A DNA stretch of 64,000 nt from Macrostomum lignano (taxonomy: Eukaryota), in contig NIVC01003727.1 in assembly GCA_002269645.1 (NCBI GenBank), positions 53,172-117,171 on the forward strand, given 5' to 3'. Made by a program: the position numbers and the translations under genes. The notes beneath the pieces were generated by a model. It ran no database searches. It saw nothing but the letters and a program-made list of their open reading frames with translations, and was not told the origin of the DNA. How positions within the stretch are numbered: the first letter of the stretch is position 1; the number at the start of each line of letters is the position of its first letter. Positions 2,546 through 63,257 of this stretch are shown in pieces.

Positions 2546-2911
2546 GATCGCTGAAAACACGGATTCTGAAAATAATGTACCTTAAGGTACATGTAGGAAT
2601 TTAAGTACAAAAGGAAAAATTGCAACAAAAGTGCAATTCAGCATAAGCTTCTTAGAACTCGAGAAACAAGCAAAAACCACAGCGAAATTTTGCGTGTTAG
2701 ATTGCAATTCTTGATCATTCTGCGCAATTTTGGTCGTCTAGTGCAGGAAACAAGCGCTGCGCAGTCACGCAACGATAAGGACAAAGTCTAAGCGATGTGT
2801 TCGCATAAACAAAATGAAAATTGCATCCTGGCTTCAAATCAGGGTTAAAAGCACATTCGGCAGCTTCTTTCACAATAAGGAATTTCTCGAGCCGCTTGTC
2901 ATATAGCTTCA

Positions 2912-6016: not shown

Positions 6017-7840
6017 GCGGAATTTCAGCAGAATGGATGCAGCCCAGTGCGTCTGACGCTTGACTCTCGCTGCAAACTGGTTGGCTTCGTTTTTTTCTTC
6101 GTCATCGTGATGCTGGCGTTCGTGGTGGAGGTGCGGGCCTACGATGAGGACCAGAAATATGAGAACGAGCATCAGACTGGAAAGCGGAGACGGAAAATCT
6201 GCTTGGACTGCAGGGTGTCAAGACTCCTCTTCGTTGCTCTGGCTGTGATTTCAATCCTCTTGCTTGAGTGCTGGGTGCTCAAGTCTGGCCGAGCACGGCT
6301 GGCCTATGTTGGAGCAGTCAGAATTTCGAATGTTCCCGCTAGTATTTCCGCTCCTGCGGAACTGTGCAACCTGCCATCAGTTCTGTTTGCTTCTGCTTTT
6401 CTATTATTTTCTATTCTAAGCCTCGTTTTAAAGGTGCTCGGAATCGTCTGCGGTGCAATGGAAATCCGATTCGTGGATTTGTCAGGACTGGACTACACTC
6501 CACACGGCATTGTCGTGGTCATTAGACACGCGTTTTTATTCGTCTTTACTGTGCTGCAAACGCGCTTCTTTCTAAAGTACTGCAAAGCGTCCATTCAGCT
6601 TAGGCTTGGCAGATCCTGGCTGCTTCTCTCCATTGTGATGGCAGCGAATATTGGTGTGTGGTTTACCACAGTGGGCTTTGAGCTGCAGGATATCGGCAGA
6701 CCGGACAAAGCAATCGCTAATGGCACCTATTGCTATGATAAAAAGATAAACAAAATCAAGGAGTTCTTGTACCCCTTCGAAATAGAATACTACGTCATGT
6801 CATCTCTAATGGCCTACATGCTGATGTCCAACATGGGCAGGCTGGCAGAATTCCTGCACCGTCAGGTCCGCTCGGGGCCCGTTAAGTCACAGGAAATCGT
6901 TCTCAGAGTCAAGCGCATCATGCTGCGGAGTGGAGGCGCGCAAGGCGGCAGTCACGAAGATCAGGCGCAGTCCGAATTCGCTTCGATCAGAAAGCACTCA
7001 TGGATGATTTCGATTGGCGCCGTGGCTGTGGTAGCTTCGCTAACTGTCGTTGCATTCGTCCACTTCGACGACGAAAATAATCCAGTCCTCAGAATTCTGT
7101 TATTCTCGCTGCAAATGGTGTTGCAAGCAGTTTCTATGCTGGTTCTCGCCGTGCTTTTCTGCTATTTTCGAGTCGCTAAGAACCGGCGCATCGGCTCCGA
7201 CAATCTGGTCGACCGGCTGCTGCTGTGGCTTGGCGTCATCGCTATTGTAGGCAACAACGCTCACAATATTTGGAAAAATGTTAATCAAATTGAAAATGAT
7301 CTGCCAGTTGATTTTGCGTCAAATCACACGAAGGTGAGAATTGAGCTCTCTGAAAACTTTTTCGGCGCCGTTCAGTCAGTTTTGCAAGCGGTGTTCCTGG
7401 AACTGATGCTCGTTGGCGCGTTCACGCTGGACAACAAACTGCACGAGGCGTTGAAAAGGTTTTTAGTCCGATGCTTTTCAAGCGGGACCCAACCTGAAGA
7501 AGCGCAACGCCACCGTCTACGGAATTTTGTCATTGCCATGCTGAACTTTCTGATTCTGCTCAACTTTTCCGAGTGGGTCCTAAGCGCCCTCTGCTTTCCG
7601 TTGTTTTTCCAAAGAGAAGAAGACAAACACGACAATTTGTCCCTAATGCTCATGCCGCTGAAGGTTTTCTACAGGTTTCACTCGGTCATGAGCATTCAGG
7701 ACTTCAAGAAGCACCATCTGAGAGTGGAGACTGCACGAAACTCGGCAGCCGGATGTGAGTCAGACGATGAAGCGGGAGCTGACGCCGTGCTGATCCATTT
7801 CACTGATATTGAGAATGGCGAACTTGAAACCAATGGGTAA
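6017..7840 (+). CDS. OTOP: Otopetrin-family proton channel, single large exon; 5-prime end uncertain
   Basis: About 12 hydrophobic segments. Otopetrin motifs FLYPFEIEY (cf. LYPFNIEYSL), AANIGVW, VLQTRFFL and MPLKVFYRFHS. No suitable in-frame ATG before TM1; in-frame phase-0 acceptors at 6016, 6028 and 6031. Confidence 0.9.
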   Translation, partial: AEFQQNGCSPVRLTLDSRCKLVGFVFFFVIVMLAFVVEVRAYDEDQKYENEHQTGKRRRKICLDCRVSRLLFVALAVISILLLECWVLKSGRARLAYVGAVRISNVPASISAPAELCNLPSVLFASAFLLFSILSLVLKVLGIVCGAMEIRFVDLSGLDYTPHGIVVVIRHAFLFVFTVLQTRFFLKYCKASIQLRLGRSWLLLSIVMAANIGVWFTTVGFELQDIGRPDKAIANGTYCYDKKINKIKEFLYPFEIEYYVMSSLMAYMLMSNMGRLAEFLHRQVRSGPVKSQEIVLRVKRIMLRSGGAQGGSHEDQAQSEFASIRKHSWMISIGAVAVVASLTVVAFVHFDDENNPVLRILLFSLQMVLQAVSMLVLAVLFCYFRVAKNRRIGSDNLVDRLLLWLGVIAIVGNNAHNIWKNVNQIENDLPVDFASNHTKVRIELSENFFGAVQSVLQAVFLELMLVGAFTLDNKLHEALKRFLVRCFSSGTQPEEAQRHRLRNFVIAMLNFLILLNFSEWVLSALCFPLFFQREEDKHDNLSLMLMPLKVFYRFHSVMSIQDFKKHHLRVETARNSAAGCESDDEAGADAVLIHFTDIENGELETNG

Positions 7841-9370
7841 ATTAATTTTTAAACTGATTTTTAAGCCATTGTGAGAGGATGGCAATTGGACTATTGCCTG
7901 TCCTTTTGTCTTTGTTTGCATGCTGGTATGTTTCACGTTGCTGACCCTGCATATCCGCTTGTGCAAAGTAAAAGCAACAGACAGGGAAGCCGGGCAAGGA
8001 GTTGGAACAAAGGGTTCGTGCAGAAGCATTGAGTCATCTCATCCAGGTCCATTCCTTGGGCTCCCAAAAGATAAAATGATAATGAAATCGGGATTTTATG
8101 GTTGACTTATCGATTTCAGTTGGCCCGGAGCTGTACTTCGGGCTCCATTCAAGTGTTTAGGCTGAGATAAATTAAGTACATTCACTAAAGTGCATGGCCA
8201 CATACTGTACTCAAGTAGTCTAAAGTGAAAATTAGTGATGGAGTTAAGGGTGCTTTCGTTTGTTTGCTATATTGGAAACTTATTTAACTTTGCACTAAAC
8301 AGATTTACATGCACCGCAAGTTGAGTTTTTCCGAATCAACGTCTTTTTAATGATTTTTTTATCAGCCATGAAATATAATTCTTTGATAGCTGTCTCTAAT
8401 TATTCCAATAAATATATTAATCGAGCTTATATAATACTCGTACTCAAGTGGTTAGAAAATATTCAACAGATGTTTTCTGCGGATCGCAGCTTGTCTTTTA
8501 ATTACCCGCATGATTAATAGATTTTCGCAAAGCTTCATTTGGTTCCTTCTCCTACCACTTTGAATCCATAATACTCCAATTTATTATTGTACACCAAAGA
8601 GCGTGTTTAGAGGCTTTCTCAGAAATTTTTTAATATTGTTAAAGGAATAACAAAATAAATGATAGAATTTTGTCCAACATGTAGACAGTTTCTTGTGCGT
8701 TCAGTTATTCCGGAATTTTCCGAGTGATATTTTAAAAAAAATTCATTCGTACTGATCATACTGCTCACACTAATAAATAAATTTAACTGAAGCAGATCGG
8801 CCACATTCGGCTGAGGACTTCCGTTTCATCTCTTTCTTCGAAATAAAAAATGATCGCAAAAATCCATGTTCTTAGGTAAAGTAAACTTAGAACAGACTTG
8901 CTAATCTACAGAGGCTGCGGAACAGGGAGCCAGAGGGGCAGGAGGGCGGTGTCTATCCTCCTAATGCTAGGAGGGCAGCTGCTTCAGTTCTTGAGCAAAA
9001 AATGCAATCAGGAACCTATCTAAGGGAGGTCAAGGTGGTCATTGGCCCCTAGGCAAGAAAAAGTGTCTCGCGGAAGCACCGGCAAAATATTTTACAGAAA
9101 ATGATAAGAATTCAAATACAGTACACAATAGTCAATAGATGATTACGTTAATCAGAAATAATTTACGTAATGAGAACTTGCGTAATAAGAAGAGAATGTT
9201 AAACTTAATTGTAACAATTGATCCGCTGTTTCATCTGATAGGTGATTGGTCAGTCAGAGCTTTCGACCTGTGACTGTACGGTCAGTCATGTGCATTGTGT
9301 TGAAGTTGGGCCCGTCGGCAGCTGACGAACTTGGGTGACCCGCCGCTGCTATGCAGGACTGCCGCTGCTG

Positions 9371-10605
9371 GGCTCCCACATTAGCGTCCTTGGAGTGTCC
9401 ATGACAGTGGCGCCCTGCAGCTCGCCATTGGCTAGTAGAGCAGAGTCAGTCCTGTCTGTCCGGGGGCCCAGCTCGCTATTGGCTAGTAGAGCAGAGTCAG
9501 CCCTGTCTGTCCGGGTGCCGCAAGTTGCCGCGCTTCAAGCAGGACGCGAGTCCAGAGCATCTGGGGCAGAAGTTGCAGCAGCAGGTGCCAGCAATCGCAG
9601 CCGAAGCGAGCAGGACGCAGAGCAGTGGCATCAACCAGTAGTTTCTATCAGTCAGCTTGACTTCCAGCATTTGAGCATCGTTGTTGCGATCTGCAGTCTT
9701 CTCTGGCGCTCTGTCAGTTCTGTTGCTGTCCAAAACAGCGTCTGCAGAACTCAGCCTGGTCCGTCTGCATCGGTCGTTGCTTAAGAGTCGAATTTCAGAA
9801 TTTTCAGAATCTTCGTGGCCACTGGTTTCGCTCAGCTGATTTGGTGCCACCTTGACATCGGGCTGGTCTGTCAAAAATGTGAATAGAAGCCAGCTTTCTA
9901 GAGTCAGGTTGCACTTTGAAATTCTTTTTGTTTCTATAAATAGCTCGTGCAGGTACGGGTAATTTCCACGGGTTTTCCTTAGAAATATGGAACTATTTTT
10001 TAAATCTGAATTTTAATTGGAATTCTCTTATTATAATGATTTAGGCTACTTTAAACTTCGCTAAATCAGATCTAGTACGCTGACGATTAAACAGAATTGG
10101 GCCTTGCGGCTAAGGGACACAACTCTTTCACGGAAATTCCATGGAATTTTCATGCCAACATGGAACCGTGAGCTAGAAATGCTTTATCTCTGATGCACGG
10201 AAATTAATCAAGATAATCAGAAAAGTCTTCTTAGAATTGTCTGGATCTGGGCCTCTTAAATTTTAGAGTGGTTGTTCTTGCTTTCAGAAGAGGGACTTTA
10301 ATATCTGCTTTCGGCTTTGCACTACTCCTGACATCTAATCAAGTTTATACAGAAAATTCGTCATTAAAGAATGGCGACCTCACCCGAGACGGTAGTCGCG
10401 CGGCCTGACGGGTTCGCACATTCTGGGTGCGCCAGAGAAAACGACTTTAAGAACGCGACAGAGCGGACGTGGGACCTGGACAGGCAAGGCAAAGCCCTGA
10501 GTTGGTGTCAGGGTATTCTCCAGGCTGGCAGTCGCTGACGGGAGTGCAGTCCGCGGCAAGGAGGACCGTCAGAGCCACAGCCAAGTGCAGCACGAAGTGC
10601 TTCAT
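9371..10605 (-). pseudogene. Receptor paralog A (TNFR-like single Cys module), frameshifted as assembled (exons 10605-10384, 9867-9497 or about 9371)
   Basis: MKHFVLHLAVALTVLLAADC...CQPGEYPDTNSGLCLACPGPTSALS, then a 1-nt gap near 10452, then FLKSFSLAHPEC. Phase-1 intron. Exon 2 has a TM helix (YWLMPLLCVLLASAAIAGTCCC). A possible second shift near 9512 precedes a duplicated RTDRxDSALLAN tail. Confidence 0.7.
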
Positions 10606-11260
10606 ATTGTCTTGCGCATTGCTTTCAGACAGATTTATCAAGAATGCGCTGCGACATTGGGCCTTTTCATATTACCAATTCCATAACCAGAATCGGTTCG
10701 GAATTCCAAGAAAAACAGCAGTATAACTATTAAACTCTGTTAATATTTGACTGCCTTAACAACCTAACTTAGCACGATTTTTCACTTTCTTCTTGGCGAT
10801 TGTCATTCAATAATAAAAACTTTATAGCACGTATCTCCCTCTAGTTATGGAGACAAAAAGTTATACTTCACAAATTGGTTCTGGTTCTGGAACCAGAACA
10901 AGCAATATGAAAAGGCCCATAGAGCTGGGCGGGGTACAGATACAGAAGAATGAATAAGGGGAATCTACGGAAAAACCATGGAATGAACGGACGGAATCTA
11001 AAAATAGACATTAGCAATCTTGCTATTTTTAGATTTTGTACACTTGGACAATTCAGAACTTACAATAAATAATTTTTCTAGAGGTGAAAGACCGTGCAAA
11101 TCAGAAAGGGAATGCTGGCCTTATATACACCAGTAACATAATTCGGGATTTTGGAAAGCGAGCTCATTAATTTGACATTCCAGCTATGGAGAGCCCAGCA
11201 TGGAGATCAAACCCTCCACAGCAATGTTTTTATACGACAGAAACGCGGGCTGAGTCTCGA

Positions 11261-12492
11261 CTATCGGCATCTGGGGCTGGTGGTGCTCTTCAGCCCCACC
11301 AGCAGCGCCCGAGCTTCCGGCTCACTGGCGGGCGCCACTGCAGCCTCCGAAGTGTCGGCTTTGCTGTCGCATGCGAGCATCTTGCGACACACCGCAGGGC
11401 GCAGTGCAGATGCGATGCCGCATCCAGCCAGCAGCAGCAGCAGTAGGGACAATGCCACCAATACTACAGCAGCCCATGATGGCAGTGTCTGTGCCGGGTT
11501 CTCGGTGGACGAGCTCACAGTCGACAGTTTTGAGGCTGCTGGGCTCGAGGCTGCAGACAATTGTATTCAGACTTTTCGATTAGTTTAGTTGTATTGTAAA
11601 TAAAGTCAAGTCAGAACTTTATTGTGACACAGTAAAGCACAACCAACATTGCAGGCTAAAATGCCTGTTTTATAGAGAAACTGTTTATTTTCGATCGTCT
11701 GGCTCACCCATCCCCACCCCGCGCTAGCAAAGTACATTCAGCGAGAGAGTGAGGGCATCAAAACAACTTAACCCAGCACCCGCCCCCGGCGCGCACGCAG
11801 GCAAATTTACCACTGCACATATTGCATGTGTACTCAGCAACACCGAAAAGTCGCCACCACAGAAGATTCCATCTGTGGGTCGCCACTTTTGAGAATGCAA
11901 GTAAAGAGTCTCTTAATCTTTGCGAGAGACGCAGCTCAGCTACGCCGCGGCAGACTTGAGTTGAGGAATGATGAAGTGGGGGGAGCGGTGTGCGAGGGTT
12001 GGACGGATTAAAGCTACCCCGATCAGTTTTCTCGTATCGATTATTCCAGAATAGTCCATGAGAAATTGCTCACTGGCGCATAGAGTGGCGACTGTTCAAT
12101 GTTGCTGAGTATAAATACAGCAATATGATTATTGCTGTGCACGCATGCAGTTTCTACTCACCGTCAGACCTTACGGTGCTTGCAATCCAGTCTTTAAGAG
12201 AGGCTGTGAAACCAGCTGTACCCGTTGAGTCACTGAATGACGGCGACGGCGTGAATGCAGTTGACGTGATTGACGCAGAAGTTGCTGCTGATTTGTCCTT
12301 ACATCCGGGATGCAACTCCAAGAAATCAGTTTTGAAGTCCGAAGCGGGGAGCTCAGGGCAGGTGGCGCAGCCAATGCCAGCCAACTCGTACTGGCCTGCG
12401 GGGCAGTTCAGCTTGCTGGCTAGGGCTGCTCCCACCGCCGGCCACAGCGTCAGCAGGACAATCAAAGTGGACGGAGCGATAGCAGAACGCAT
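11261..12492 (-). CDS. Receptor paralog B, 206 aa (exons 12492-12162, 11550-11261)
   Basis: Signal peptide, CPAGQYELAGIGCATCPELPASDFKTDFLELHPGC, Ser/Thr stalk, G|GTGAGT donor, TCTGCAG acceptor in matching phase 1, TM helix (WAAVVLVALSLLLLLLAGCGIA) and short tail. Confidence 0.8.
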
Positions 12493-14055
12493 GTTAGTGC
12501 AATACTAGCGGCTTCCGCTGCAAAAGATACCCATCAATCTACACGCAAGCAATCCATTTGGAAGAAGTTATTGCTATAAAACTTTAGGGTCAGTCCACGT
12601 TTTATCCAGGGAATTCCCAAGGACCGCCCACAGAAGTTCCGAGATAAAAAATAAATGTACATCTGGTCTACGATATTACAAGCGTACATAGTCCAGCTGT
12701 GTACATTGGGTGTACACTGGGTGAACCAGTTCAGAAAACAGCCCGAAAGCCTCTTCAGACGAAAGCTCATGAAAGCAACAATAAGATTGTTTATTATGAC
12801 AACCAATGGAAACAGAAATTAAGCAAATATCTTAATTTGAAACTGCAGCGAAATCGGAAAATCGCCAACGAGGCAGAACGCAGCCCTTAAAACACTGCGG
12901 CTGGGTGAGGCCTACGATCTCAAACCAGCTCTAACCCCCACAGAGCATGAGCACCAAGCAAGCGTGCGAGGCGGAGTAATCACTAAAGCCGGTTTGCAAA
13001 GTTGTAAACCAAGTCATTAGTGAATCAGTCCAGGGGACAACGAGCAATTGGCTGAGCAATGACAGCACGCAAAAGCCTCGAAACCAGGGGTCTGCAAATT
13101 CCGTCCATCGGGCCACCTGCAGCCCGGAAGTTTCCCTATCCGGTCCTGGGGTCCTTTGAAACTTCAAAATAGCAATTCGGCCCGCTCAAGGTTTGTGTTT
13201 CTTCTCGGCTCTCTGTTTGGTTCTTTCCGCTCTCCCTTCTCCTCTCATCTCTCCCCTCACCTCGTCTCCTCTCTTCTGTCATCTCTTCTTCGTCCTCTCC
13301 CTCCCCTCTCCTTTACTCACTCATCTGGCTCGCAGCAGATTTAGATTATTTTTCTGGTCCTTGAGATAAAAATTTTTCCGATCTTTGCTCCAAGTCCAAA
13401 CCGAAGCAAACAAAGAGAGGGAGTCAACAGCAGCGTCTTTCACTTTAAATACAACTCTACCTGATCGGTCAACTGACTGGGTAACGCCTGCGTCTTGCTG
13501 CTTCTGCTTCAGCTCGGGCACCACAGCGGGCTCCTGCAGCACAGCCTTCTCTGACCAAAACTGACCACAGGTAAATGAGCATTTTAATTTATAAAACTTT
13601 TCTGAAGCAAGTCATGTATGATTTTGGCGAAGTGACTTTTCTAAAAAACGGCCTGTATTTTACACAATTTTACACACTTCATAGGGTAATATGTGCGATG
13701 CCAGACAATTGTAAAACGGTATTTTACAGCGTAACAGGGGCAAAGTTCGGAGCATACAGGCGATTAAAGTGCTTGTGTTCGCATATTTTTTTGCTATCCA
13801 TAGCTGATTGGATCACTGGATCATCTCTGTAGAAAGTTCCATTTTCAGATAGATCGTATTTTCGCTTCATCACAGGGTGAAACTCGAATCCGCTCGCGCT
13901 TCGTCAACTCCCCGATGTCGCGTCAGAAACTCTGAATCGTCTGGCACTGGACTTCCGGTTGGATTTTCAAAAAGCAGCAGTCAGGTGGAGCCGTAACGAG
14001 TGTGAAGTATCTGGAAGTTTCGTCTATAGACGGTATCTATCTAGTTAGCCACTGC

Positions 14056-15838
14056 TTACACTGTAGCAAACTCTTCCTTTTGTTCGAACCTGTAGAGCCT
14101 GGGATTTTCTATCATACTGGGTTCAGTGCGAGCAGCCTGGCCTAAGTCTTGGTCCTGGTCCTGGTCCTGGTAATGGTGCTGGTCTTGGTCCTGATCCTGG
14201 TCCTGGTCCTGGTAATGGTGCTGGTCTTGGTCCTTGTCTTGTTCCTGGTCTTGATCCTGGTCTTGGTCCTTGTCTTGTTCCTGGTCTTGTTCCTGGTCTT
14301 GTTCCTGGTCTTGTTCCTGGTCTTGGTCCTTGTCTTGTTCCTGGTCTTGGTCCTGGTCTTGGTCCTTGTCTTGTTCCTGGTCTTGATCCTGGTCTTGGTC
14401 CTTGTCTTGTTCCTGGTCTTGTTCCTGGTCTTGTTCCTGGTCTTGTTCCTGGTCTTGGTCCTTGTCTTGTTCCTGGTCTTGGTCCTGGTCTTGGTCCTTG
14501 TCTTGTTCCTGGTCTTGTTCCTGGTCTTGTTCCTGGTCTTGGTCCTGGTCTTGTTCCTGGTCTTGGTCCTGGTCTTGGTTCTTGTCTTGTTCCTGGTCTT
14601 GTTCCTGGTCTTGACTGTCTTGGTTTCGGTTCTCCCGATTGAGAGGCATCATCTCACTTGTCGGCGTGCTACTCTTGTTTTCGTGCCTAAAACAAGCAGT
14701 CAGCCTTTGGTGCACAAGACCAATGAGACAGACGGCAACGATGACCAGGATTAATGACAGTGGCATCAAGACTGGCCAGGGAAGTTGGTTAGCCGAACCT
14801 TCGCCATAGCTAGCTGCTGTAAGAACTGAACTCGACTCCGGAGCATTAGTTGTATGCGCGTCTGTATTGGTTGAAGCACCGATAGGATTAGGTTTAGGAT
14901 TAGCATTAGCACCAGCGCTAATTGGTGTTTTTGGCGGCACCTTGTCTTCGGTGTTGTGAAGCTCCGTTGAACTAACTGCAAGGGCATTTAAAGTTATATT
15001 TATATTGTAACTAAAAATAGTTATTGTATTTGTTCACGGGGGACACCCGTGGATTTTCCTTACAAACATGGATCCAAAAGACAATGAAACCAAAATTGTA
15101 CACTTGTACACTTCCAGTGACCTTGAATTGTATAGTGCTGCATTTGATATGACCAAATTAAGTTTCGGGTAACGAAAAACCAGATGATAGAAACGATTTT
15201 ACTAAATTTAACTTGACTGCTCGCTTCTGTTTAACTCCGGTTTCTACCAACATGGAACCAAAATTTACCCACTGTAGTAACTGCAGAATGCCCACAGAAT
15301 TTACATACTGCCAGCATGGAACCAAAATCTTCAAGTTTTACCTGCACTATAGCAACTGCAGAATGCCCACAGAATTTACATACTGCCAACATGGAACCAA
15401 ATTCTTCAAGGTTTACCCACTATAGCAACTGCAGAATGCCCACAGAGTTTACATACTGCCAACATGGAACCAAATTCTTCAAGGTTCACCCACAATTAGC
15501 AACTGCAGAATGCCCACAGAATTTACATACTGCCAACATGGAACCAAAATTTTGAATCAAAAATGGAACCAAGGGAGCAAATACAACAAAGAAAGCTCAC
15601 CCTCGGTAGTGGCAGTCCAGGTGGCCGGAGGCGGATACGGGCACTCCTTGTGCTGGTTCGCGAATGTCTTCAGATAGTCTTCCGTATTTCCCTCCAGGCT
15701 GGGGCAGTCCAGGCAGTCAACCAAAGCATCTGGATATTCGCCAAGCTCGCATTTCGGCCTGACGACCGGTGCGCCGAGTGTTTGAATGGCTGAGCAGGCC
15801 AGTAGCATAAATAGCAGCCGCACTTTGGACAACTGCAT
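14056..15838 (-). CDS. Receptor paralog C, 385 aa (exons 15838-15601, 14975-14056), with Q/D/E-repeat cytoplasmic tail
   Basis: Signal peptide, CELGEYPDALVDCLDCPSLEGNTEDYLKTFANQHKEC, phase-1 intron, stalk, TM helix (PWPVLMPLSLILVIVAVCLIGLV), (QD/QE)n, then MIENPRLY...EFATV*. Confidence 0.8.
14150..14612 (-). repeat. Coding hexamer repeat (CAAGAC/CAGGAA/CAGGAC) encoding (QD/QE/KD)n
   Basis: In-frame in exon 2 of paralog C; the opposite-strand LVLV and SCSW ORFs are by-products. Confidence 0.9.
15245..15550. repeat. 73-bp tandem repeat, about 4 copies, in the intron of paralog C
   Basis: AACATGGAACCAAA...CTGCAGAATGCCCACAGAATTTACATACTGCC recurs with a 73-bp period (e.g. 15388 and 15461). Confidence 0.9.
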
Positions 15839-16749
15839 ACTTCAATTCTAGTAGATATCTCGTGGTTGAACAGAGAGGAGAGAAGATAATATTCGAAAGC
15901 TTTAATTGGTAGCGCACGCTCGCGCGATTCAGCCTAGTTATAATTTGCACATAGAATTTCCATTGAATTTCCGTGGAACAGCAACGGAAATGCCAAGATT
16001 TTCAAGTTTTGTAAGTTATAAAAATAGCCAATGCGTGTGTTGAATGTTAGCTTCTAACTAAAGAAGGCTAACGTAACTGTTTACTATGAAACAATCCATT
16101 CAATTTAGAACGGTAAAGATATGCCCCTGCTCGTGCATGTCCCCCCCCCCCCCCAAGAAATTCTAAAGACTGCACACTAAATAGCAGAAATGAAATGAAA
16201 ATTGTATTTCGCTGTAGGACAGATAATTATTTAAAATAGAGAATGATTAGAAAATTAAGCATTTTCTATTTTATGGTTAATCAACAATAATAATGATTGA
16301 TAGTACATCTGCTTACAGAAAATGCATGAGTAGCTATTTACAAGGAAAGATTTGGAATGAAGTTAATGTTTGAATCTTCATAAATAATGACACATTCAAA
16401 TATTTATTAGAATTATTATAAACACATGACGAGCGCAATCCTGGTATGAAACATTTTTGTTTATTTGGATGAATGCTCGCTGCTAGGAAGTTGATGAGCA
16501 CGATTCACATTTTCTTTGTAAGGAGAAACTCGAACTCCAACGAACCAACCGGCTATGCAGACTGTCGTTAAAGCCAGGCTTCGATTTCAGAGTCTTGCCA
16601 GAATGGGATTTGGTGTTACAAACTCTGAATCGCTTTCGCATTGACCTTCAGCCAAAAGACGACCACTCGCGGAGCCGCAATGAGTCAATTTTTTCAAATT
16701 ATTCCTCTGTGAACGCAGTCGAATGAGCACTACTTGTAACTCGAAAAGT

Positions 16750-18750
16750 TTAATCCCTTTCAGACTCGAAAAGCTTGGGATTTTCTGTCATGTTGGGATT
16801 CTTGCGATGAGGCTGTGGGTCTTGATTCCGTCTGTGGCTTCGGTCCGGGTCTTGGTCGTTGCTTGGGTCTTGGTCGTTGCTTGGGTCTTTGTTGTTGCTT
16901 GGGTCTTGGTCGCGACTGTGGCTTAGGACTTGATTTAGGCTTTGACTCTGTTCTCTGTCCAGCTGATTGGGGGGAGCATTCTCACATTTCAGGCGTCTGC
17001 TCAGCCGTTTTAAACAAGCCCGCAGATATCGGCGACAGATGTAGCACACAATGGCGAGGAAAAAAGCCAATATGACGACAACTGAAGCAATGAGCAAGTG
17101 TCTTTCCACGACTCCACCATTTCTAACAGTTGTATCAACTGGGCTCGATGCTGGAGGTTGAGTCGTAGACGCTTCGGTTTTGGTTGAAGCACCAACAGTA
17201 GGAAAGCTGCTGCCGCCTGCTGGCGTTGTTGGCGGCACTTGGCTTGTTTTCGAAACTGTAAGGCAGTTGAAGTCATATGTTCTTGTTTCTAAAAATAGAC
17301 TTTGTGCACCCGTGGGATACCCATGGATTTCCCTTCGCCAACGGGGTTCTAATGACTAATTAAAATGAATCGATATGTTTAACTCTAATATCATACTAAG
17401 TTCCGGGGATACAGTTTACAAGGACAACTTAAGTAGAAGGACGCAACACTCGAAATCTATGGTAAATGTTTTGAAGGCAACTTTTCTACACTACAGAGAT
17501 AGGAGGTTTTAATTTTTTCAGCACAAAAATTGTTATTGCTTTCGATAGGAGGCAGACACAATGTTCATCTTTTGATATGCTGTGCCTTCCGTATAGCTCT
17601 ATTGGGATTCACAAAGCATTTTTTCAGAAATTAGGATTCTATGTTCAATTATTATTCTACGTACATTTGCATGTCTAAAATGTCTAAAATGACACGGCTC
17701 AGCTCATTGGTTTTATGAATCCATTTTATAATTCTTAGCTGACTGTGTAACAATATGTGTAACCGAGATGATAAAATAAATTCACAAAACCAAAAATTCG
17801 AGCTGTGTCATGCATTTTTATGATATTTAGGTACAGGAAATATACGTAGAATAAAAAATTAGCATAGAATCCTAATTTTCTGAACAAGAAGCTTTATGAA
17901 TATCAATAGAGCTATAAGAAATGCACAACACATCAAAAGATGAACACTGGGTCTACCTCCTATCGAAAGCAATTCTTGGCTCGAAAGATAATCTTTAAAG
18001 ATTTTCTCACGTTTTATTCATACGGCCCAATAACAGTTTTTGCGCTGAAAAAAATTAAAACCTTCTGTCTCTGTGTATTTTTTCAGAAATGACTGCCTTA
18101 AATTTTTTTCCAAGAAACGAGGTTTCCGGTCCTTCTACTTAAGTCGTCCTCGGCTCTTGTATCTAAAAATAGACTTGTACACCCGTGGGATACCCATGGA
18201 TTTCCCTTCGCAAACATGGATCTAATGACTAATTAAAATTGATCAATATGCTCAACTCTAATATCATACTTTCCGGGGAAACAGTTTATCGAAAGAGTGA
18301 CCCCTAAGATATTAGAGTTGTTCAGGTAAAGAATTTCAATTAACTTGTGACGTAAACGTAGAATATGACCAACAATAACTACACAATGTCTACAGGGCTC
18401 CCATACCAGCTACATGGAACCAACAGCTCAGAGTGTAGCCAAAAATACGTACACAATGTTCACATGGTTTCCCATGGCATGAACTCACCTCTGACAGTCG
18501 AAGTCATGGTGGTCTCGACCGGAGTAGGCGGCGGCGCATACGGACACTCGGGGTGTACTGATGCGAACGACTTCAGATAGGACTCCGGGTTTTCAAGAAG
18601 GCGGGGGCAGGGCAGACAGCCAGCCAGGTCCTCATCGAAATACTTACCCGGCTTGCATCTGTGCTGCTTAATCGGATTGGCCGGTAACGGACTGGCTGAG
18701 GAGACCAACAAAACTAGCAACAGAAAGCTGCGTTTGTCTTTTAATCGCAT
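16750..18750 (-). CDS. Receptor paralog D, 255 aa (exons 18750-18489, 17255-16750)
   Basis: Signal peptide, CKPGKYFDEDLAGCLPCPRLLENPESYLKSFASVHPEC, Pro/Thr stalk, phase-1 intron, TM helix (LLIASVVVILAFFLAIVCYIC), (DQDPSN)-type repeats, then MTENPKLFESERD*. Confidence 0.8.
17421..18150. mobile_element. Palindromic MITE/foldback element, about 730 bp, in the intron of paralog D
   Basis: Termini AGGACAACTTAAGTAGAAGGAC and GTCCTTCTACTTAAGTCGTCCT are inverted repeats with 1 mismatch. Internal arms (17500-17640 versus 17870-18070) are also inverted homologs. Another copy lies at 585. Confidence 0.85.
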
Positions 18751-19212
18751 TGTCTTCAATTTGTAGTGAGTGAGCTAGCGCAGAAGAGGGCGTGGGCGTT
18801 GCAAATCGTGGGCGAATCGTTTTATGCTCATGCGTAGACTTTCCGTGGAAAGACTATGGAATTGCAGCGGGAAGGCTTTCAAGGCTAAGTGTACATTTTT
18901 AGTTTCTAAAATAAGCAACTACGAGTATTCGTTTTCGTACGTAAAATGCATTCCCTTAGCAGACAAAATTCAAAACTGGCATCGTCTTTGTACTATATTG
19001 CTAATCTGAAGACAGCACTTATCTACAGACTTTCAATAATATAGGAATAAGTTTTAAGACCAATATCAATATTGATGAGGTAAAATTTTGCTAAAACAAA
19101 CTGTAAAATCGATCAAGTTTTCGGATTTTTTTATCATTGTTGAATTCAGCTGAAATTTGATACCCATTATTAGGAACCTAAGCAGCAGGTTTCTCAGAGC
19201 ATACAGTCATTT

Positions 19213-19950
19213 TCATCTAGTTACCCTGGCATTTGGCATTCTCTGGAACCACGAGTTGAAGCAAACCCTTAGATAGGCTTCCTGAAACGGGTCCAGGATA
19301 TCTAGGAGCTCCTCCCTAGAGTCAAGCCGCCTTACCTTCAAGTTCTTCTCCATTTTGGGAAAGTCGAGCGACTAAGTTAGATGCGGCAGCTGCTGAAGCT
19401 GCGTTGTCTGCGTTGTCGTGGTGAAGGAAGATGCGCCTTCTCCCCCGACCATGCTCACTGTGGCACTATGCTCACTGTGGCACTATGCTCACTGTAGCAC
19501 CATGCTCACTGTAGCACCATGCTCACTGTAGCACCATGCTCACTGTGGCACCATGCTCACTGTGGCACCATGCTCACTGTGGCACCATGCTCACTGTGGC
19601 ACTATGCTCACTGTGGCACTATGCTCACTGTAGCACCATGCTCACTGTAGCACCATGCTCACTGTGGCACCATGCTCACTGTAGCACCATGCTCACTGTG
19701 GCACCATGCTCACTGTGGCACCATGCTCACTGTGGCACCATGCTCACTGTGGCACCATGCTCACTGTGGCACCATGCTCACTGTGGCACCATGCTCACTG
19801 TGGCACCATGCTCGAGCAACACTGGCTGCAAAATGCCGCAGGCCTCGCGACGAAGCTTCAGCAGCGCATCCTCGTCACTGGTGACCCACTGACGGCTCTG
19901 CTCTCCAATCTCCGGGTTGTAGAAGTAGACCCGGTTTTCATTATCCGTGG
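19213..19950 (-). mobile_element. Degenerate mariner (Tc1/mariner) transposase fragment interrupted by a minisatellite
   Basis: Reads TDNENRVYFYNPEIGEQSRQWV (cf. TGDETWVYxYDPExKxQSxQW), GILQPVLLEHGATV, then the array, then RRRIFLHHDNA, then DFPKMEKNLKVRRLDSREELL...SWFQRM. Confidence 0.85.
19449..19813. repeat. 17-bp minisatellite (CCATGCTCACTGTGGCA), about 21 copies
   Basis: Direct tandem repeats inside the mariner relic. Confidence 0.95.
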
Positions 19951-20734
19951 GGCTGTGAGGTTATCGTCCACCAGTTCTACAGCGCATTTTGGTGGCCAAT
20001 GGAAGCAGAAATGTTGCACGCAAGCAGAGAGCATTCGTCTGAGAAAATTAGTGTAAAATTTCGCTGCCTTGCTTCATTTTTAATTGCATATTTCTAAAAA
20101 ATTAATACTCGCAAGCACCCCTCATATGATGAAAAATAATTTTAAATACAAACTAGAAAGAATATTAATAACTTGAGACTTGAGCTTAGATACAATGTAA
20201 TGAGTAATTTTAGCACTGGCCATCCAGCTTCAATGATGACGCACAAAAAATTGTGAGCACACGAGCCAGCACAAATCCTAGCCAATAAAACACAATTAAA
20301 AGCTTTAATATGTAACTCACCTGCCGCACTACAACTGTTCATTGAGTTAAACAAAACGAAGTTATACAGAGCCTTTAATTCAAACAACAAAATCTCTTTT
20401 CTTTCCATTGGCATAGCTCGCAGTCTGCCTGAGCTACTGCCATTTTGCTTCTTTTCTGCCTGAGCATTTATCTGAAACTGCAGAGCTGCCCGCGGGAAAA
20501 TGTACACAATTTTCCAGGAAAAAAAACAAAAAGCAAAGCTATAGACAATGTGAGTATGAGTTGCCGTGAGCAATGTGAGCAAGACTCCGTTTTTAGCTAG
20601 CAAAAACTACATGACTATTTTCGGGTGCTCGCTGAGCAATGGCTATTTTTAGATTTTGGAAATGCCATGGAATTTCAGGGAATTTTGAGCTGCTGTGGAA
20701 TTGACTGAGCCCGGCTGTTAACTAGCCTATTCAG

Positions 20735-22920
20735 TCTATCAACCAGTCTATCCCATTTATCAACTAATCTATATCTATCAACTAGTCTATCCCATATATC
20801 AACTAGTCTATTCCATCTATTAACTAGTCTATCCCATCTATCAACTAATCTATCCCATCTATCAACTAGTCTATTCCATCTATCAACTAATCTATATCTA
20901 TCAACTAGTCTATCCCATCTATCAACTAGTCTATCCTATCTATCAACTAATCTATCCCATCTATCAACTAGTCTATCCCATCTATCAACTAGTCTATTCC
21001 ATCTATCAACTAATCTATATATATCAACTAGTCTATCCCATCTATCAACTAGTCTATCCTATCTATCAACTAATCTATCCCATCTATCAACTAGTCTATT
21101 CTATCTATCAACTAATCTATATCTATCAACTAGTCTATCCCATCTATCAACTAGTCTATTCCATCTATCAACTAATCTATATCTATCAACTAGTCTATCC
21201 CATCTATCAACTAGTCTATCCTATCTATCAACTAATCTATCCCATCTATCAACTAGTCTATTCTATCTATCAACTAATCTATATCTATCAACTAGTCTAT
21301 CCCATCTATCAACTAATCTATCCCATCTATCAACTAGTCTATTCCATCTATCAACTAATCTATATCTATCAACTAGTCTATCCCATATATCAACTAGTCT
21401 ATTCCATCTATTAACTAGTCTATCCCATCTATCAACTAATCTATCCCATCTATCAACTAGTCTATTCCATCTATCAACTAATCTATATCTATCAACTAGT
21501 CTATCCCATATATCAACTAGTCTATTCCATCTATCAACTAGTCTATCCCATCTATCAACTAGTCTATTCCATCTATCAACTAGTCTATCCCATATATCAA
21601 CTAGTCTATCCAATATATCAACTAGTCTATCCAATATATCAACTAGTCTATCCCATACATCAACTAGTCTATCCAATATATCAACTAGTCTATCCATCTA
21701 TCAACCAGTCAGTCCCGTCTATATATAAACTAGTCTATCCCATCTATCAACTAGTCTATCCCATATATCAACTAGTCTATCCAATATATCAACTAGTCTA
21801 TCCCATCTATCAACTAGTCTATCCCATATATCAACTAGTCTATCCCATATATCAACTAGTCTATCCAATATATCAACTAGTCTATCCAATATATCAACTA
21901 GTCTATCCAATATATCAACTAGTCTATCCAATATATCAACTAGTCTATCCCATCTATCAACTAGTCTATCCCATCTATCAACTAGTCTATCCAATATATC
22001 AACTAGTCTATCCCATATATCAACTAGTCTATCCAATATATCAACTAGTCTATCCCATCTATCAACTAGTCTATCCCATCTATCAACTAGTCTATCCCAT
22101 ATATCAACTAGTCTATCCCATCTATCAACTAGTCTATTCCATCTATCAACTAGTCTATCCCATCTATCAACTAGTCTATCCCATATATCAACTAGTCTAT
22201 CCCATATATCAACTAGTCTATCCAATATATCAACTAGTCTATCCAATATATCAACTAGTCTATCCAATATATCAACTAGTCTATCCAATATATCAACTAG
22301 TCTATCCCATCTATCAACTAGTCTATCCCATATATCAACTAGTCTATCCCATCTATCAACTAGTCTATCCCATATATCAACTAGTCTATCCAATATATCA
22401 ACTAGTCTATCCCATCTATCAACTAGTCTATCCCATCTATCAACTAGTCTATCCCATATATCAACTAGTCTATCCCATCTATCAACTAGTCTATTCCATC
22501 TATCAACTAGTCTATCCCATCTATCAACTAGTCTATCCAATATATCAACTAGTCTATCCCATATATCAACTAGTCTATCCCATCTATCAACTAGTCTATC
22601 CAATATATCAACTAGTCTATCCCATCTATCAACTAGTCTATCCCATCTATTTATCAACTAGTCTATCCAATATATCAACTAGTCTATCCCATATATCAAC
22701 TAGTCTATCCCATCTATCAACTAGTCTATCCCATCTATCAACTAGTCTATCCCATCTATCAACTAGTCTATCCCATATATCAACTAGTCTATCCAATATA
22801 TCAACTAGTCTATCCCATCTATCAACTAGTCTATCCCATCTATCAACTAGTCTATCCCATATATCAACTAGTCTATCCCATCTATCAACCAGTCAGTCCC
22901 GTCTATTTATCAACTAGTCT
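20735..22920. repeat. 21-bp minisatellite (TCAACTAGTCTATCCCATCTA), about 100 copies
   Basis: About 2.2-kb tandem array; source of the RLVDRWD ORFs. Confidence 0.97.
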
Positions 22921-23439: not shown

Positions 23440-23682
23440 TGGGTCAGCAAGTACAGCAGGTGGGTCAGCACACAGCAGGTGGGTCAGCACACAGCAGGTG
23501 GGTCAGCATACACAGCAGATGGGTCAGCACACACACACACAGCAGGTGGGTCAGTATACACACACAGCAGATGGGTCAGCACACACACACTCAGCAGGTG
23601 GGTCAGCACACAGGTGGGTCAGCACACAGGTGGGTCAGCACACAGGTGGGTCAGCACACAAACAGCAGATGGGTCAGCACGA
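23440..23682. repeat. Imperfect CAGCAGGTGGGTCAGCACA(CA)n repeats just 3-prime of the LRR1 stop
   Basis: Variable-length tandem units. Confidence 0.85.
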
Positions 23683-25258
23683 GAAGTAGCGGCACAGCTC
23701 GAACCGCCGCTCGAAGCACGCAGCGGAGCAGAAGTGCAGCATGACGGGCACCGTAGCGACGCCGCCGTTACCGTCAGAGTCGACGGGCGCGGGCAGCTCG
23801 TAGCAGGCGGCCAGGTGCCGCGGGTGCACGGGCAGCGGGCAGGGGGCCACCCGCGGGTCGCAGTGACGCCTGCAGGCGGCGCAGGCAGGCATTGCGGCCA
23901 GGTCGTCCAGGAGGTGCCACGGCAGTGGCGGCGGCGACTTTGAACGAAAATCGACAACCAGCCGACGAACGACGGCCAGACAGAGCGAGGCGAGGTCGGG
24001 CACGGGCAGGCGGACGGGGAGGCGGCCGGGGTCGCGGCAGCTGAACGGCTGGCCGGAGCCAATGGACAGCCGGTCGAGTCGGACAGCCGGCCGAGGCAAA
24101 AGGCGAAGGCGGTTGCCGTCGAGGGCGAGGGAGCGCAGCAGCGGCACGGCAGGCAGGCAGTCGGGCAGGCGGGTCAACCGGTTGCCGCAGAGGTCGAGGC
24201 TTCGCAAGGCGGCGAGGCGGCCGAGCTCAGAGCCGAGCCAGGCCAAGCAGTTGTCGCGGAGGTCCAGCACCGCCAGACTGCTGGCAAGGGGGCCGGCGGC
24301 ACGGAGTTCGAATCCTGGAAATGTCACCAGGCGATTGCCAGGCAGGCTGAGCTCCGTTAGCGGCAGACGATTGATTGCGTCCGGCAGAGACTCGAGCTGG
24401 TTGCCATGGATACGTAGGACGCTGAGCTGGCCCAGCCGGCAGAGGCGGGCGTCGAAGCGACGCAGGCCGATCGGACCGACGCTGAGCTGCACCAGGTGAG
24501 GCGGGAAGTCGCCGGCGGAGGGGTAGGCCTCCCGGCTGGACACCTGGCAGGGCGGGCGATGAATTAATTGATTCACTGTATTGGCTCGCGAGCTTTTGTT
24601 CGGGTCACCCGAGGGGGGGGGGGCAGAAGAGCTAGTCCATATACTAAATCTTCAGTTAGGAGGGGGTCGCTTTAGTCGTGTGGGTTAGTGCTGCAGAGTT
24701 AAGCATAATTGGCCGTGGTTAGTATACAGTTAATTAGGCCTGCCAAGGTTATCTCCTTAGGCAGCAATGCCAAATTAAGCGGAGCTCCAATTCAGCCCAC
24801 AGAGCAGCAGCTCCGACCTGTCCTGAACTCACCGTCAGCTGAGTTTGTGTACGCGCCCGCACCCGTCGCTTGTCCAACGACGTCAGCGAGGAGTAATCCA
24901 AGCCGGAGCCTAGCAGCAGGCGTCGGTCAACCCCACGACCTCCGGCTACGTCGCCGAGAAGGCGAGCCAAGCCGGCCAGCTGGCGGGGCTCGGCGCCGCT
25001 AATGAGCAGCTGCACGTGCGGCCCGGTCAGGCACAGGGTGAGCCGGCCCTCGGACAGGAAGCGGGTGTGCAACCGCTCAATGTTGGCGGCGGACACCGGC
25101 CAGGCCTGGCAGCCGCTGCCGCCCCACTGGCAGGCGAGTCGATAGCGACCGTCGCGGCCGCACAGGCTCAGCAGCGCCCGGCGGGCTCGCGGAGGCGGGC
25201 CGCCACCGCAGCCGGTGCCGCCGGTGAGCAGCACGGCTAGCTGACAGTCGATTCGCAT
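23674..25258 (-). CDS. LRR1: Leucine-rich repeat protein 1 (CRL2 substrate receptor, PPIL5/LRR-1), 431 aa (exons 25258-24833, 24543-23674)
   Basis: N-terminal MRIDCQLAV...RFLSEGRLTL (PIF1/LRR1 PH-like). Junction QLT|VSSREAYP aligns with the LRR1 ITSKKDYP..FP region. LRRs, a BC-box-like VPDLASLC, and C-terminal CAAC...FCSAAC. Confidence 0.8.
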
Positions 25259-25479
25259 TGCGCCGTTCGCCCCCAGCTGTTGCGCTGAATGAATCAGGGC
25301 CAAGGACTTTTATAATTTCTTGCGGGAAAAAAGGACTACTAAGTGCTTAGTGCTAGGCAGCTGTTCAAGCTCTATCAAGGATTACTAAACAAATAATATG
25401 TAACCTACGAGACTTCCTGCGGTGCGTTTTATGAGCGGAACTTATCTTAATCTGTCCTGAATATCATAAAAAATGCGCC

Positions 25480-38968: not shown

Positions 38969-40763
<1,795 letters not shown>

Positions 40764-61689: not shown

Positions 61690-63257
<1,568 letters not shown>

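What the first reader, a model, noticed from the sequence alone, without database searches (positions are those of the whole stretch)
9371..18852. Tandem cluster of four divergent TNFR/BCMA-like single-Cys-module receptors
Seen: four co-oriented two-exon genes (A 10605, B 12492, C 15838, D 18750), each with a phase-1 intron at the same architectural point. Each encodes signal peptide + C-x2-G-x-Y-x(6-8)-C-x2-C-x(11-13)-F-x3-H-x-x-C + S/T/P stalk + TM helix + tail. Known: small TNF receptors (BCMA/TACI/BAFF-R, Fn14, Drosophila Grindelwald) use one short Cys module; paralog D YFDEDLAGCLPC resembles BCMA YFDSLLHACIPC. Unusual: only 4 Cys plus a YLKSF...HPEC helix-like segment I do not recognise from any TNFR fold, low identity between paralogs, very different tails and no death domain. 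Inference: a rapidly diversifying lineage-specific immune or recognition receptor family.
Basis: partly seen in the sequence, partly recalled or inferred. Interest (0 to 1): 0.88.

Follow-up and report, generated by a model that had tools for sequence, protein, structure and literature searches.

The report
Flatworm cluster of mini TNFR-like receptors
Four neighbouring genes in the flatworm Macrostomum lignano encode small membrane proteins with a tiny cysteine-stapled knob that resembles the ligand-binding hairpin of TNF-receptor-type domains. They look like a species-restricted offshoot of that fold, not proven TNF or BCMA-type receptors.

Summary
Four co-oriented minus-strand, two-exon GT..AG genes start at 10605, 12492, 15838 and 18750. 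Each encodes leader + C-x2-G-x-Y-x6-7-C-x2-C-P-x11-13-F-x3-H-x2-C + stalk + TM + tail. Gene A is the exception: as assembled it has a 1-nt frameshift in a CCC run (~10471-10473) and stops at codon 53.

The window is Macrostomum lignano. UniProt models of C-like and D-like copies use the same splice junctions, and the D-like model is auto-named "TNFR-Cys domain-containing protein". An exhaustive HMM scan of 1.84 billion proteins finds the whole module only in M. lignano.

Only the first half (hairpin + CxxCP) has relatives, namely TNFR-clan repeats:
- Ephrin_rec_like units: hhalign 95%.
- BCMA/TACI: hhalign 40%.
- Pfam TNFR_c6 and BCMA: sub-threshold, E 0.02-0.05.

AlphaFold (pLDDT 74) predicts a hairpin plus helix. 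The top Foldseek PDB hits are BCMA, but none is significant. There is no death domain or TRAF motif, and the DxL motif occurs in only one paralog.

Verdict: a lineage-restricted family with a reduced TNFR-clan module. TNF binding is plausible, since M. lignano has about 10 TNF ligands, but untested. "Rapidly diversifying immune receptor" is unsupported, because dS is saturated and pN<pS.

The parts
10384..10605 (-). Gene A exon 1: leader plus Cys module. The module is split between two frames (10530-10471 and 10468-10418) by a 1-nt deficit in the CCC run at 10471-10473. As assembled, the ORF stops at codon 53.
9497..9867 (-). Gene A exon 2: charged stalk, TM (9637-9569), Cys-rich juxtamembrane region with LASCLKR (9550-9530), and a short tail. 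The last codons lie in a 51-nt x2 tandem repeat (9418-9519).
12162..12492 (-). Gene B exon 1: leader, Cys module (12405-12301), and a long S/T-rich stalk. The donor is GTGAGT, phase 1.
11261..11550 (-). Gene B exon 2: stalk, TM (11476-11402), juxtamembrane MLACDSK (11380-11360), and tail.
15601..15838 (-). Gene C exon 1: leader and Cys module (15751-15641). This is the only paralog with a D-x-L (DAL) at the hairpin tip. Phase-1 donor.
   Evidence: junction shared with P0001
14056..14975 (-). Gene C exon 2: S/T/P/N stalk, TM (14778-14713), and LTACFRH (14703-14683). It also carries a ~165-aa (DQ/EQ/DK)n tail encoded by a 12-nt microsatellite (about 14631-14137) and a C-terminal SMIENPRLY motif (14118-14092).
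18489..18750 (-). Gene D exon 1: leader and Cys module (18657-18544), which includes YFDEDLAGCLPC. Phase-1 donor.
   Evidence: identical to P0003
16750..17255 (-). Gene D exon 2: mucin-like stalk, TM (17097-17038), LRACLKR (17025-17005), DPSNDQ repeats, and a C-terminal NMTENPKLF motif (16794-16768). The CCCCCC run (~16975) is where P0003 changes frame.
14976..15077 (.). Conserved block at the 3' end of the C intron. It contains CTAAAAATAG (15011) and GGAAAATCCACGG (15047-15059). It is 73-75% identical to the D-intron blocks at 17254-17335 and 18157-18225. A has the same composite at 9934 and 9964-9978.
17256..18488 (-). D intron (1233 nt), enlarged by a nested inverted repeat (17408-18163). 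That repeat is flanked by a 125-nt direct duplication of the conserved block (17272-17397 and 18146-18270).
15949..15993 (.). C promoter-proximal motif cluster, GAATTTCCATTGAATTTCCGTGGAAC...GGAAATGC, next to a TATA-like element about 110-155 nt upstream of the ATG. Counterparts lie upstream of D (18837-18876) and B (GGGAATTCCC, 12606-12640), and related GGAATTCC-type sequences (by eye) lie upstream of A (about 10670-10720).

Best explanation
This is a real family of small type I membrane glycoproteins, restricted to Macrostomum as far as public data go. It arose by old tandem duplications.

Each protein displays one reduced TNFR-clan cysteine module on a flexible stalk that is S/T/P-rich in B, C and D and charged in A. 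The module is an A1-type disulfide beta-hairpin (C1-C2) followed by CxxCP and an amphipathic helix pinned by a second disulfide (C3-C4).

Most likely mode of action:
- The hairpin-helix knob is the ligand-binding surface, as in the minimal TNF receptors BCMA, TACI, BAFF-R, Fn14 and Grindelwald.
- The leading candidate ligands are the expanded M. lignano TNF-family trimers.
- Ligand-driven clustering would act through a conserved juxtamembrane L-x-[AS]-C motif, a probable palmitoylation site.
- It would also act through disordered acidic repeat tails and, in C and D, a shared C-terminal ENP[KR]L[YF] motif.
- Death domains and TRAF sites are not involved.

Shown: the gene structures, the motif, the topology, the restriction to M. 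lignano, and the clan-level hairpin similarity. Inferred: the disulfide pairing, ligand identity, palmitoylation and signalling.

Gene A is either a recent pseudogene or carries a homopolymer assembly error.
For: - Gene models and motif.
- Leader and TM hydropathy.
- Exon/intron GC contrast.
- Independent UniProt models with the same splice junctions, and the source name 'TNFR-Cys domain-containing protein' for the D-like copy.
- The exhaustive HMM scan finds whole-module hits only in M. lignano. All partial hits are repeats that Pfam calls Ephrin_rec_like, TNFR_ELAPOR1, NCD3G or TNFR_c6.
- Weak Pfam TNFR_c6 and BCMA-Tall_bind hits.
- hhalign to TNFR-clan units gives 95.5% and 90.8%, and to BCMA/TACI 40.5%.
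- Two AF2 models (pLDDT 74) both give a hairpin plus helix, and both retrieve BCMA as the top PDB match. For D, hairpin rmsd is 0.4-0.8 A over 17-18 residues. Fn14, TACI, Grindelwald and BAFF-R also appear in the D list.
- M. lignano is reported to have about 10 TNF ligand sequences but one recognised NGFR-like TNFR (PMC7519573).
- pN<pS in all paralog pairs.
- A shared cis-element architecture suggests co-regulation.
Against: - No family-level threshold is reached. TNFR_c6 scores 15.5 bits against a cutoff of 29.4, and BCMA-Tall_bind 14.2 against 27.
- B and C give no Pfam hit at all.
- No Foldseek hit has E<=0.001, and a PDB sequence-profile search found nothing at E<=10.
- Similarity is confined to about 20-28 residues of a very common disulfide hairpin. 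It is stronger to non-TNF-binding Ephrin_rec_like repeats than to BCMA.
- The second half of the module has no relative anywhere.
- DxL is present only in C.
- There is no death domain or TRAF motif.
- No transcript evidence could be reached.
- A and B have no counterpart in the protein databases.
Confidence: 0.45

Rival explanations
1. The module does derive from the TNFR clan, but it is a single Ephrin_rec_like/GCC2_GCC3-type unit. In that case the proteins are surface or glycocalyx molecules that bind something other than TNF ligands, for example in adhesion, as a co-receptor, or in microbe or mate recognition.
For: - The best single-unit HMM scores (up to 17.6-18.2 bits) and the best hhalign result (95.5%, P 1.4e-8) are to Ephrin_rec_like units, not to BCMA (10.2 bits, 40.5%).
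- Some of those units share the same four-Cys spacing, C-x13-C-x2-CP-x~16-C.
- The stalks are mucin-like and the tails are low-complexity repeats with no TNFR signalling motifs.
Against: - The four proteins themselves do not hit PF07699 even at E<=10.
- The comparison units were chosen because they matched the profile, which inflates the hhalign values.
- The predicted second half is a helix, as in BCMA/TACI, not a second hairpin.
- Ephrin_rec_like units normally occur in tandem arrays, not singly.
Confidence: 0.33
2. This is an orphan family specific to the lineage. Its C-x2-G-x-Y...C-x2-C hairpin arose independently (convergence), so no function can be transferred from TNFR-clan proteins.
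For: - The whole module is found only in M. lignano among 1.84 billion representative proteins.
- All external matches are short, Cys/Gly/Tyr-driven and individually insignificant.
- There are no significant structural matches.
Against: - Several independent weak signals point to the same clan: the source name, Pfam, HMM hits, hhalign, and the Foldseek ranking, where BCMA comes first of 350,542 chains for two different paralogs.
Confidence: 0.15
3. The cluster is decaying or non-functional. It would consist of pseudogenes or mispredicted ORFs, not expressed receptors.
For: - Gene A is frameshifted as assembled.
- Database models of C-like and D-like copies (P0002, P0003, P0001) also carry frame changes.
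- A and B have no annotated protein.
- No transcript evidence was obtained.
Against: - B, C and D have intact ORFs across both exons, with canonical splice sites.
- pN<pS.
- There is a strong exon/intron GC contrast.
- Cys, Gly, Tyr, Phe and His positions are invariant after saturation of synonymous sites.
- All the frame changes sit in C homopolymers, as expected of long-read assembly errors.
Confidence: 0.07

Closest known systems
BCMA (TNFRSF17), with TACI CRD2 and BAFF-R: minimal single-CRD TNF receptors
   Same: - A single tiny CRD on a single-pass membrane protein.
- C-x2-x-x-[YF]-x7-C-x2-C hairpin of the same length. D and BCMA share 8 of 18 residues, YFDEDLAGCLPC against YFDSLLHACIPC.
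- The hairpin is followed by helical structure.
- BCMA is the top Foldseek hit for both models.
- No death domain.
   Different: - Only one disulfide follows the hairpin, where the D2 module has two.
- The DxL ligand-contact motif is present only in paralog C.
- Cleavable-looking leader (type I), whereas BCMA is type III (my knowledge).
- Long stalk.
- No TRAF motifs.
- Pfam BCMA-Tall_bind 14.2 bits against a cutoff of 27; hhalign 40%; full-length superposition is poor, rmsd 6-8 A.
Ephrin_rec_like / GCC2_GCC3 repeats (PF07699) and related TNFR-clan repeats (TNFR_ELAPOR1, NCD3G)
   Same: The C-P-x-G-x-Y-x6-8-C-x2-C-P core. This gives the best profile and hhalign similarity. Some units have the same four-Cys spacing.
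   Different: - Those domains occur as tandem arrays in large proteins, with a second hairpin after CxxCP.
- Here there is a single unit followed by a conserved [YF]LK[ST]F...H-x2-C helix that has no match.
- PF07699 itself does not hit the four proteins.
Fn14 (TNFRSF12A) and Drosophila Grindelwald: single-CRD TNFRs
   Same: A small type I receptor with a signal peptide, one CRD and a short unstructured tail. Both appear in the Foldseek list: Fn14 with TMq 0.39, and Grindelwald with TMq 0.44, the highest whole-domain TM.
   Different: Both have three disulfides, and both signal through TRAF or a defined intracellular motif (my knowledge). The Foldseek E-values of 2.7 and 4.5 are not significant.
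The canonical platyhelminth NGFR-like TNFR (PMC7519573)
   Same: The same species encodes it. It also has a TNFR-type Cys hairpin and type I topology.
   Different: That receptor is reported as NGFR-like, with several conserved CRDs and a predicted death domain, and as single-copy. The family here has one reduced module and no death domain, and an SmTNFR-derived HMM would not be expected to find it.

Membership tests
TNF receptor superfamily (TNFR_c6 / TNFR-Cys repeat) | A1-type start of a CRD: C-x2-[G/E]-x-[YF]-x5-9-C-x2-C, forming a disulfide-bridged beta-hairpin | tested here: met
   The motif is invariant in all four paralogs. AF2 predicts a hairpin, E9-12/E17-20, in D. The disulfide itself was not checked, because no coordinates were available.
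TNF receptor superfamily (TNFR_c6 / TNFR-Cys repeat) | Score at or above the curated family threshold | tested here: not met
   For Pfam TNFR_c6, D scores 15.5 bits (E 0.023) and A 14.3 bits (E 0.056), against a cutoff of 29.4. B and C give no hit. A source names the D-like P0003 'TNFR-Cys domain-containing protein', presumably from a PROSITE profile. I could not rerun that.
TNF receptor superfamily (TNFR_c6 / TNFR-Cys repeat) | Second module completing a roughly six-Cys CRD (B2/C2/D2) | tested here: not met
   Only one further Cys follows CxxC, so the module has four Cys in total in all four paralogs. One-disulfide second modules do exist in some TNFR CRDs (my knowledge), so this is atypical but not excluding.
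TNF receptor superfamily (TNFR_c6 / TNFR-Cys repeat) | Structural match to solved TNFR CRDs | tested here: inconclusive
   There are no hits with E<=0.001. For D, the top 12 hits are all BCMA (E 0.6-1.5), with Fn14, TACI, Grindelwald and BAFF-R lower in the list. For C, the only 3 hits are BCMA.
TNF receptor superfamily (TNFR_c6 / TNFR-Cys repeat) | Binds a TNF-homology-domain trimer | not testable with these tools
   No complex prediction or ligand sequences were at hand. PMC7519573 reports about 10 M. lignano TNF ligand sequences.
TNF receptor superfamily (TNFR_c6 / TNFR-Cys repeat) | Cytoplasmic death domain or TRAF-binding motif | tested here: not met
   There is no Death-domain Pfam hit at E<=10. 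No tail contains [PSAT]x[QE]E, PxQxxD or PxExx[FYWDE].
BCMA/TACI/BAFF-R subgroup | DxL motif at the hairpin tip | tested here: not met
   C has D-A-L. D has D-E-D at the equivalent positions, A has D-T-N, and B has no Asp (alignments).
BCMA/TACI/BAFF-R subgroup | Family profile match (BCMA-Tall_bind, TACI-CRD2, BaffR-Tall_bind) | tested here: not met
   BCMA-Tall_bind scores 14.2 bits (E 0.049) against a cutoff of 27, for D only and for profile positions 1-17 only. hhalign against a BCMA/TACI alignment gives 40.5% over 22 columns.
BCMA/TACI/BAFF-R subgroup | Type III topology (no signal peptide) | tested here: not met
   All four start with a hydrophobic leader.
Ephrin_rec_like / GCC2_GCC3 (PF07699) | Family profile match and tandem repeat organisation | tested here: not met
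   There is no PF07699 hit at E<=10, and there is one unit per protein. hhalign to units from retrieved PF07699 proteins gives 95.5%, but over 25 columns and on a set selected by the profile.

The most novel reading that the evidence does not exclude
These are genuine additional TNF-ligand receptors. They would be a Macrostomum-specific family of minimal, BCMA/Fn14/Grindelwald-style receptors with a new hairpin-plus-one-disulfide-helix CRD and a non-TRAF, non-death-domain signalling tail. They would partner the expanded M. lignano TNF ligands and overturn the published view that platyhelminths have a single TNFR.
Probability: 0.2. Interest if true: 0.7.

Novelty: new variant of a known kind. 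Interest (0 to 1): 0.5.

Why it matters
Published surveys report one NGFR-like TNFR per flatworm, but several TNF ligands in Macrostomum (PMC7519573). That leaves ligands without known receptors.

A tandem family of minimal TNFR-clan receptors that standard Pfam thresholds miss would supply candidates. It would also add a new, even more reduced CRD architecture to the known set of TNF receptor modules. M. lignano is a transgenic and RNAi-tractable regeneration model, so the idea can be tested directly.

If instead the module binds something else, the family is an example of a single Ephrin_rec_like-type unit used as a stand-alone receptor head. That is of narrower interest.

Tried and rejected
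- Transcript evidence. P0001, P0002 and P0003 are not on record in the contig index.
- Word-indexed homology searches returned only M. lignano C-like and D-like models, and nothing for A.
- A PDB sequence-profile search found nothing at E<=10.
- The viral fold library gave nothing significant.
- Rfam found no RNA family in the cluster.
- dN/dS as a test of rapid diversification was abandoned because dS is saturated or undefined.
- The idea of a fifth copy near the promoter-like motif at 20643-20677 was rejected. tblastn and the motif scan find none.
- Avoiding A's frameshift by alternative splicing was rejected. The two frames overlap by only ~55 nt and the shift lies inside the module.
- Literature searches for Macrostomum with TNF receptor or NF-kB found no description of this family.

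Full report
**What is in the sequence**

Region 9300-19000 holds four genes on the minus strand. Their ATG codons are at 10605 (A), 12492 (B), 15838 (C) and 18750 (D).

Each gene has a first exon encoding a hydrophobic leader and a short cysteine module. It ends at a GTGAG donor. A 516-1233 nt intron ends in AG. The second exon encodes a stalk, one transmembrane helix and a tail.

Coordinates:
- A: 10605-10384 and 9867-9497.
- B: 12492-12162 and 11550-11261 (206 aa).
- C: 15838-15601 and 14975-14056 (385 aa).
- D: 18750-18489 and 17255-16750 (255 aa).

The introns of B, C and D are phase 1. Exons have 50-63% G+C against 36-46% for introns and spacers.

The pattern C..G.[YFW].{4,10}C..C occurs four times in all six frames of the 64 kb window, only in these exons. 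tblastn with the four proteins finds no further copy.

Nine module positions are invariant: C, G, Y, C, C, P, F, H, C. Module identity is 28-51%.

**Correction for gene A**

As assembled, A's exon 1 is 222 nt. MKHF...CLACPGP is in one frame and VRSVAFLKSFSLAHPEC...TTVS is in another. The first frame stops at codon 53. One extra base in the CCC run at 10471-10473 restores the family spacing (CP-x8-FLKSF, as in C and D) and a phase-1 donor.

The public D-like and C-like models P0003 and P0002 also change frame relative to the window, at a CCCCCC run and a CCCC run respectively. A homopolymer assembly error is therefore as likely as a true pseudogene. The tools could not decide between the two.

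It has two extra ectodomain cysteines, and its stalk is charged, not S/T/P-rich.

**Origin and independent models**

A profile of the four exon-1 products retrieved only Macrostomum lignano UniProt entries. The D protein retrieved P0003, which is 100% identical over 72% of the query.

P0001 (C-like) and P0003 contain exactly the exon junctions I derived. That is independent support for the introns, though possibly only from a gene predictor.

UniRef names P0003 'TNFR-Cys domain-containing protein'. A and B have no counterpart in the databases.

**How far the family reaches**

An exhaustive hmmsearch of 1.84 billion representative proteins with the 49-position module profile gave whole-module matches only to P0001 and P0003.

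The other 19 hits are proteins in which several weak stretches add up; the best stretch covers only part of the profile, mostly positions ~4-25. Of the ten scanned, eight are called Ephrin_rec_like by Pfam, five of them also TNFR_ELAPOR1_6th and NCD3G, and four of those TNFR_c6 as well. From memory, these families belong to one Pfam clan; the co-occurring hits are consistent with that.

No single unit is significant on its own. The best reach 17.6-18.2 bits. The second half of the module, [YF]LK[ST]F-x3-H-x2-C, has no relative anywhere.

**Tests against the named families**

- Full-length proteins give no TNFR-type Pfam hit at E<=10.
- The bare modules give sub-threshold hits. D scores TNFR_c6 E 0.023 (15.5 bits, cutoff 29.4) and BCMA-Tall_bind E 0.049. 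A scores TNFR_c6 E 0.056. B and C give nothing. All hits cover only the first 17-18 profile positions.
- BLASTP of D against human BCMA aligns 18 residues at 44% identity. The BCMA sequence was verified against PDB chains.
- hhalign of the family against BCMA + TACI gives 40.5% probability over 22 columns. The TACI CRD2 sequence was verified against PDB chains; the TACI CRD1 sequence is from memory.
- hhalign gives 95.5% against Ephrin_rec_like units and 90.8% against a four-Cys 'FFD' subtype. Those sets were picked by the profile, so the values are inflated.
- BCMA scores 10.2 bits with the family HMM, below the best Ephrin_rec_like units.
- A PDB sequence-profile search found nothing.

**Structure prediction**

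AlphaFold2 on shallow alignments gave pLDDT 74 for both D and C. The predicted structure is a beta-hairpin between C1 and C2 and a ten-residue helix before C4.

Foldseek against 350,542 PDB chains gave no significant hit. For D, the first twelve hits are all BCMA (E 0.6-1.5, hairpin rmsd 0.4-0.8 A over 17-18 residues). After these come metabotropic glutamate receptor CRDs, Fn14, TACI, Grindelwald (best whole-domain TMq, 0.44) and BAFF-R. For C, the only three hits are BCMA. Whole-domain superposition on BCMA is poor, with rmsd 6-8 A.

The viral library gave nothing useful. Model coordinates are not exposed, so disulfide pairing could not be checked.

**Other features**

- All four share a juxtamembrane L-x-[AS]-C-[LFD]-[KRS] motif just after the TM. 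It is a plausible palmitoylation site.
- C and D share a C-terminal M-x-ENP-[KR]-L-[YF] motif.
- C carries a ~165-residue (DQ/EQ/DK)n tail encoded by a 12-nt microsatellite, and D has DPSNDQ repeats.
- No death domain or TRAF consensus is present.
- The BCMA/TACI/BAFF-R DxL motif is present only in C (D-A-L).
- All four have a leader peptide, unlike type III BCMA.

**Evolution**

Synonymous differences are saturated. C-D gives dS 1.27, and A-B, A-C and A-D give dS above 2. For B-C and B-D dS could not be calculated. The duplications are therefore old, and 'rapid diversification' cannot be assessed. pN is below pS in every pair, which argues for constraint, not positive selection overall.

**Interpretation**

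The best reading is a Macrostomum-restricted family of type I membrane glycoproteins. Their head is a reduced TNFR-clan module: an A1 hairpin plus a helix held by one disulfide.

By analogy with the minimal TNF receptors, the hairpin is the likely ligand-contact element. M. lignano is reported to have about ten TNF ligand sequences but one recognised NGFR-like receptor, found with an SmTNFR-derived HMM that would miss this family (PMC7519573). TNF ligands are therefore the leading candidates.

That step is inference. The hairpin is equally or more similar to Ephrin_rec_like units, which do not bind TNF.

A later preprint counts up to 19 'wengen-like' receptors in one platyhelminth (10.1101/2024.07.27.603686). 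I could not tell whether these proteins are among them.

**Seen in passing**

A composite non-coding element recurs in the cluster. It consists of CTAWAAATAG, about 25-30 nt, then GGRAAAYCC/TTCCRYGG.
- It lies 33-66 nt from the acceptor in the introns of A, C and D. It is also upstream of A and at 20643-20677.
- Related TTCCGTGGAA or GGGAATTCCC sites sit next to TATA-like elements upstream of B, C and D.
- CTAAAAATAG occurs 7 times against 0.26 expected in the window.

Its survival between paralogs whose synonymous sites are saturated suggests a shared enhancer.

Neighbouring genes are ordinary: otopetrin-like, LRR1-like, RhoGAP and adenosylhomocysteinase.

Noticed in passing
window 9934-9978, 10969-11032, 15011-15059, 17289-17333, 18163-18206, 20643-20677: A composite non-coding element: CTAWAAATAG (fits the MEF2 consensus YTAWWWWTAR, from memory), about 25-30 nt often including TGTACAC, then GGRAAAYCC(R)YGG. 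It lies at the same place near the acceptor in the introns of A, C and D, although synonymous sites between these paralogs are saturated. CTAAAAATAG occurs exactly 7 times against 0.26 expected. GGAAAWYCCRYGG (<=2 mismatches) occurs 38 times against 11.9 expected, 23 of them inside the cluster.
   Followed up: partly
window 12606-12640, 15949-15993, 18837-18876: Palindromic TTCCGTGGAA or GGGAATTCCC sites (Rel/kappaB- or STAT-like by eye) lie next to TATA-like elements, about 90-155 nt upstream of the ATGs of B, C and D. This suggests that the cluster is co-regulated.
   Followed up: partly
window 17272-18270: The D intron is twice the length of the others. It contains a 756-nt nested inverted repeat (17408-18163), a foldback-like element, flanked by a 125-nt direct duplication of the conserved intron block.
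   Followed up: partly
window 15259-15564: A fourfold ~74-nt tandem repeat in the C intron. Each copy carries ACATGGAACC. Nine of the ten (<=1 mismatch) window matches to that 10-mer lie in the cluster's introns.
   Followed up: partly
window 19260-20060 (minus strand): A degenerate mariner/Tc1-like transposase remnant. By eye it contains FSDEC, VYFYNPEIGEQSRQWV, LHHDNA and a C-terminal FQEAYLRVCFNSWFQRM. It is interrupted by a 16-nt satellite, (GTGAGCATGGTGCCACA)n, at about 19450-19800.
   Followed up: no
window 12493-12520 and 13440-13570: An AG acceptor-like site lies 26 nt upstream of the B start codon. It could be a spliced-leader or 5'-exon acceptor. A GC-rich exon-like block with splice-like borders lies between B and C. 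The 'two-exon' models may therefore lack UTR exons.
   Followed up: no
window 6047-7840 (+), 23674-25303 (-), 29137-29724 (-), 38969-39919 (-), 42113-42182 (+): Neighbouring genes: otopetrin-like, LRR1-like (PH_LRR1 + LRR), a RhoGAP exon, adenosylhomocysteinase, and one tRNA. None is immune-related.
   Followed up: partly
window 2040-2628, 21719-22657, 29729-30544, 32999-34792, 46880-47689, 49296-49989, 62021-62925: Many long satellite arrays that read as open frames on both strands. ORF lists in this genome are dominated by such repeats.
   Followed up: no
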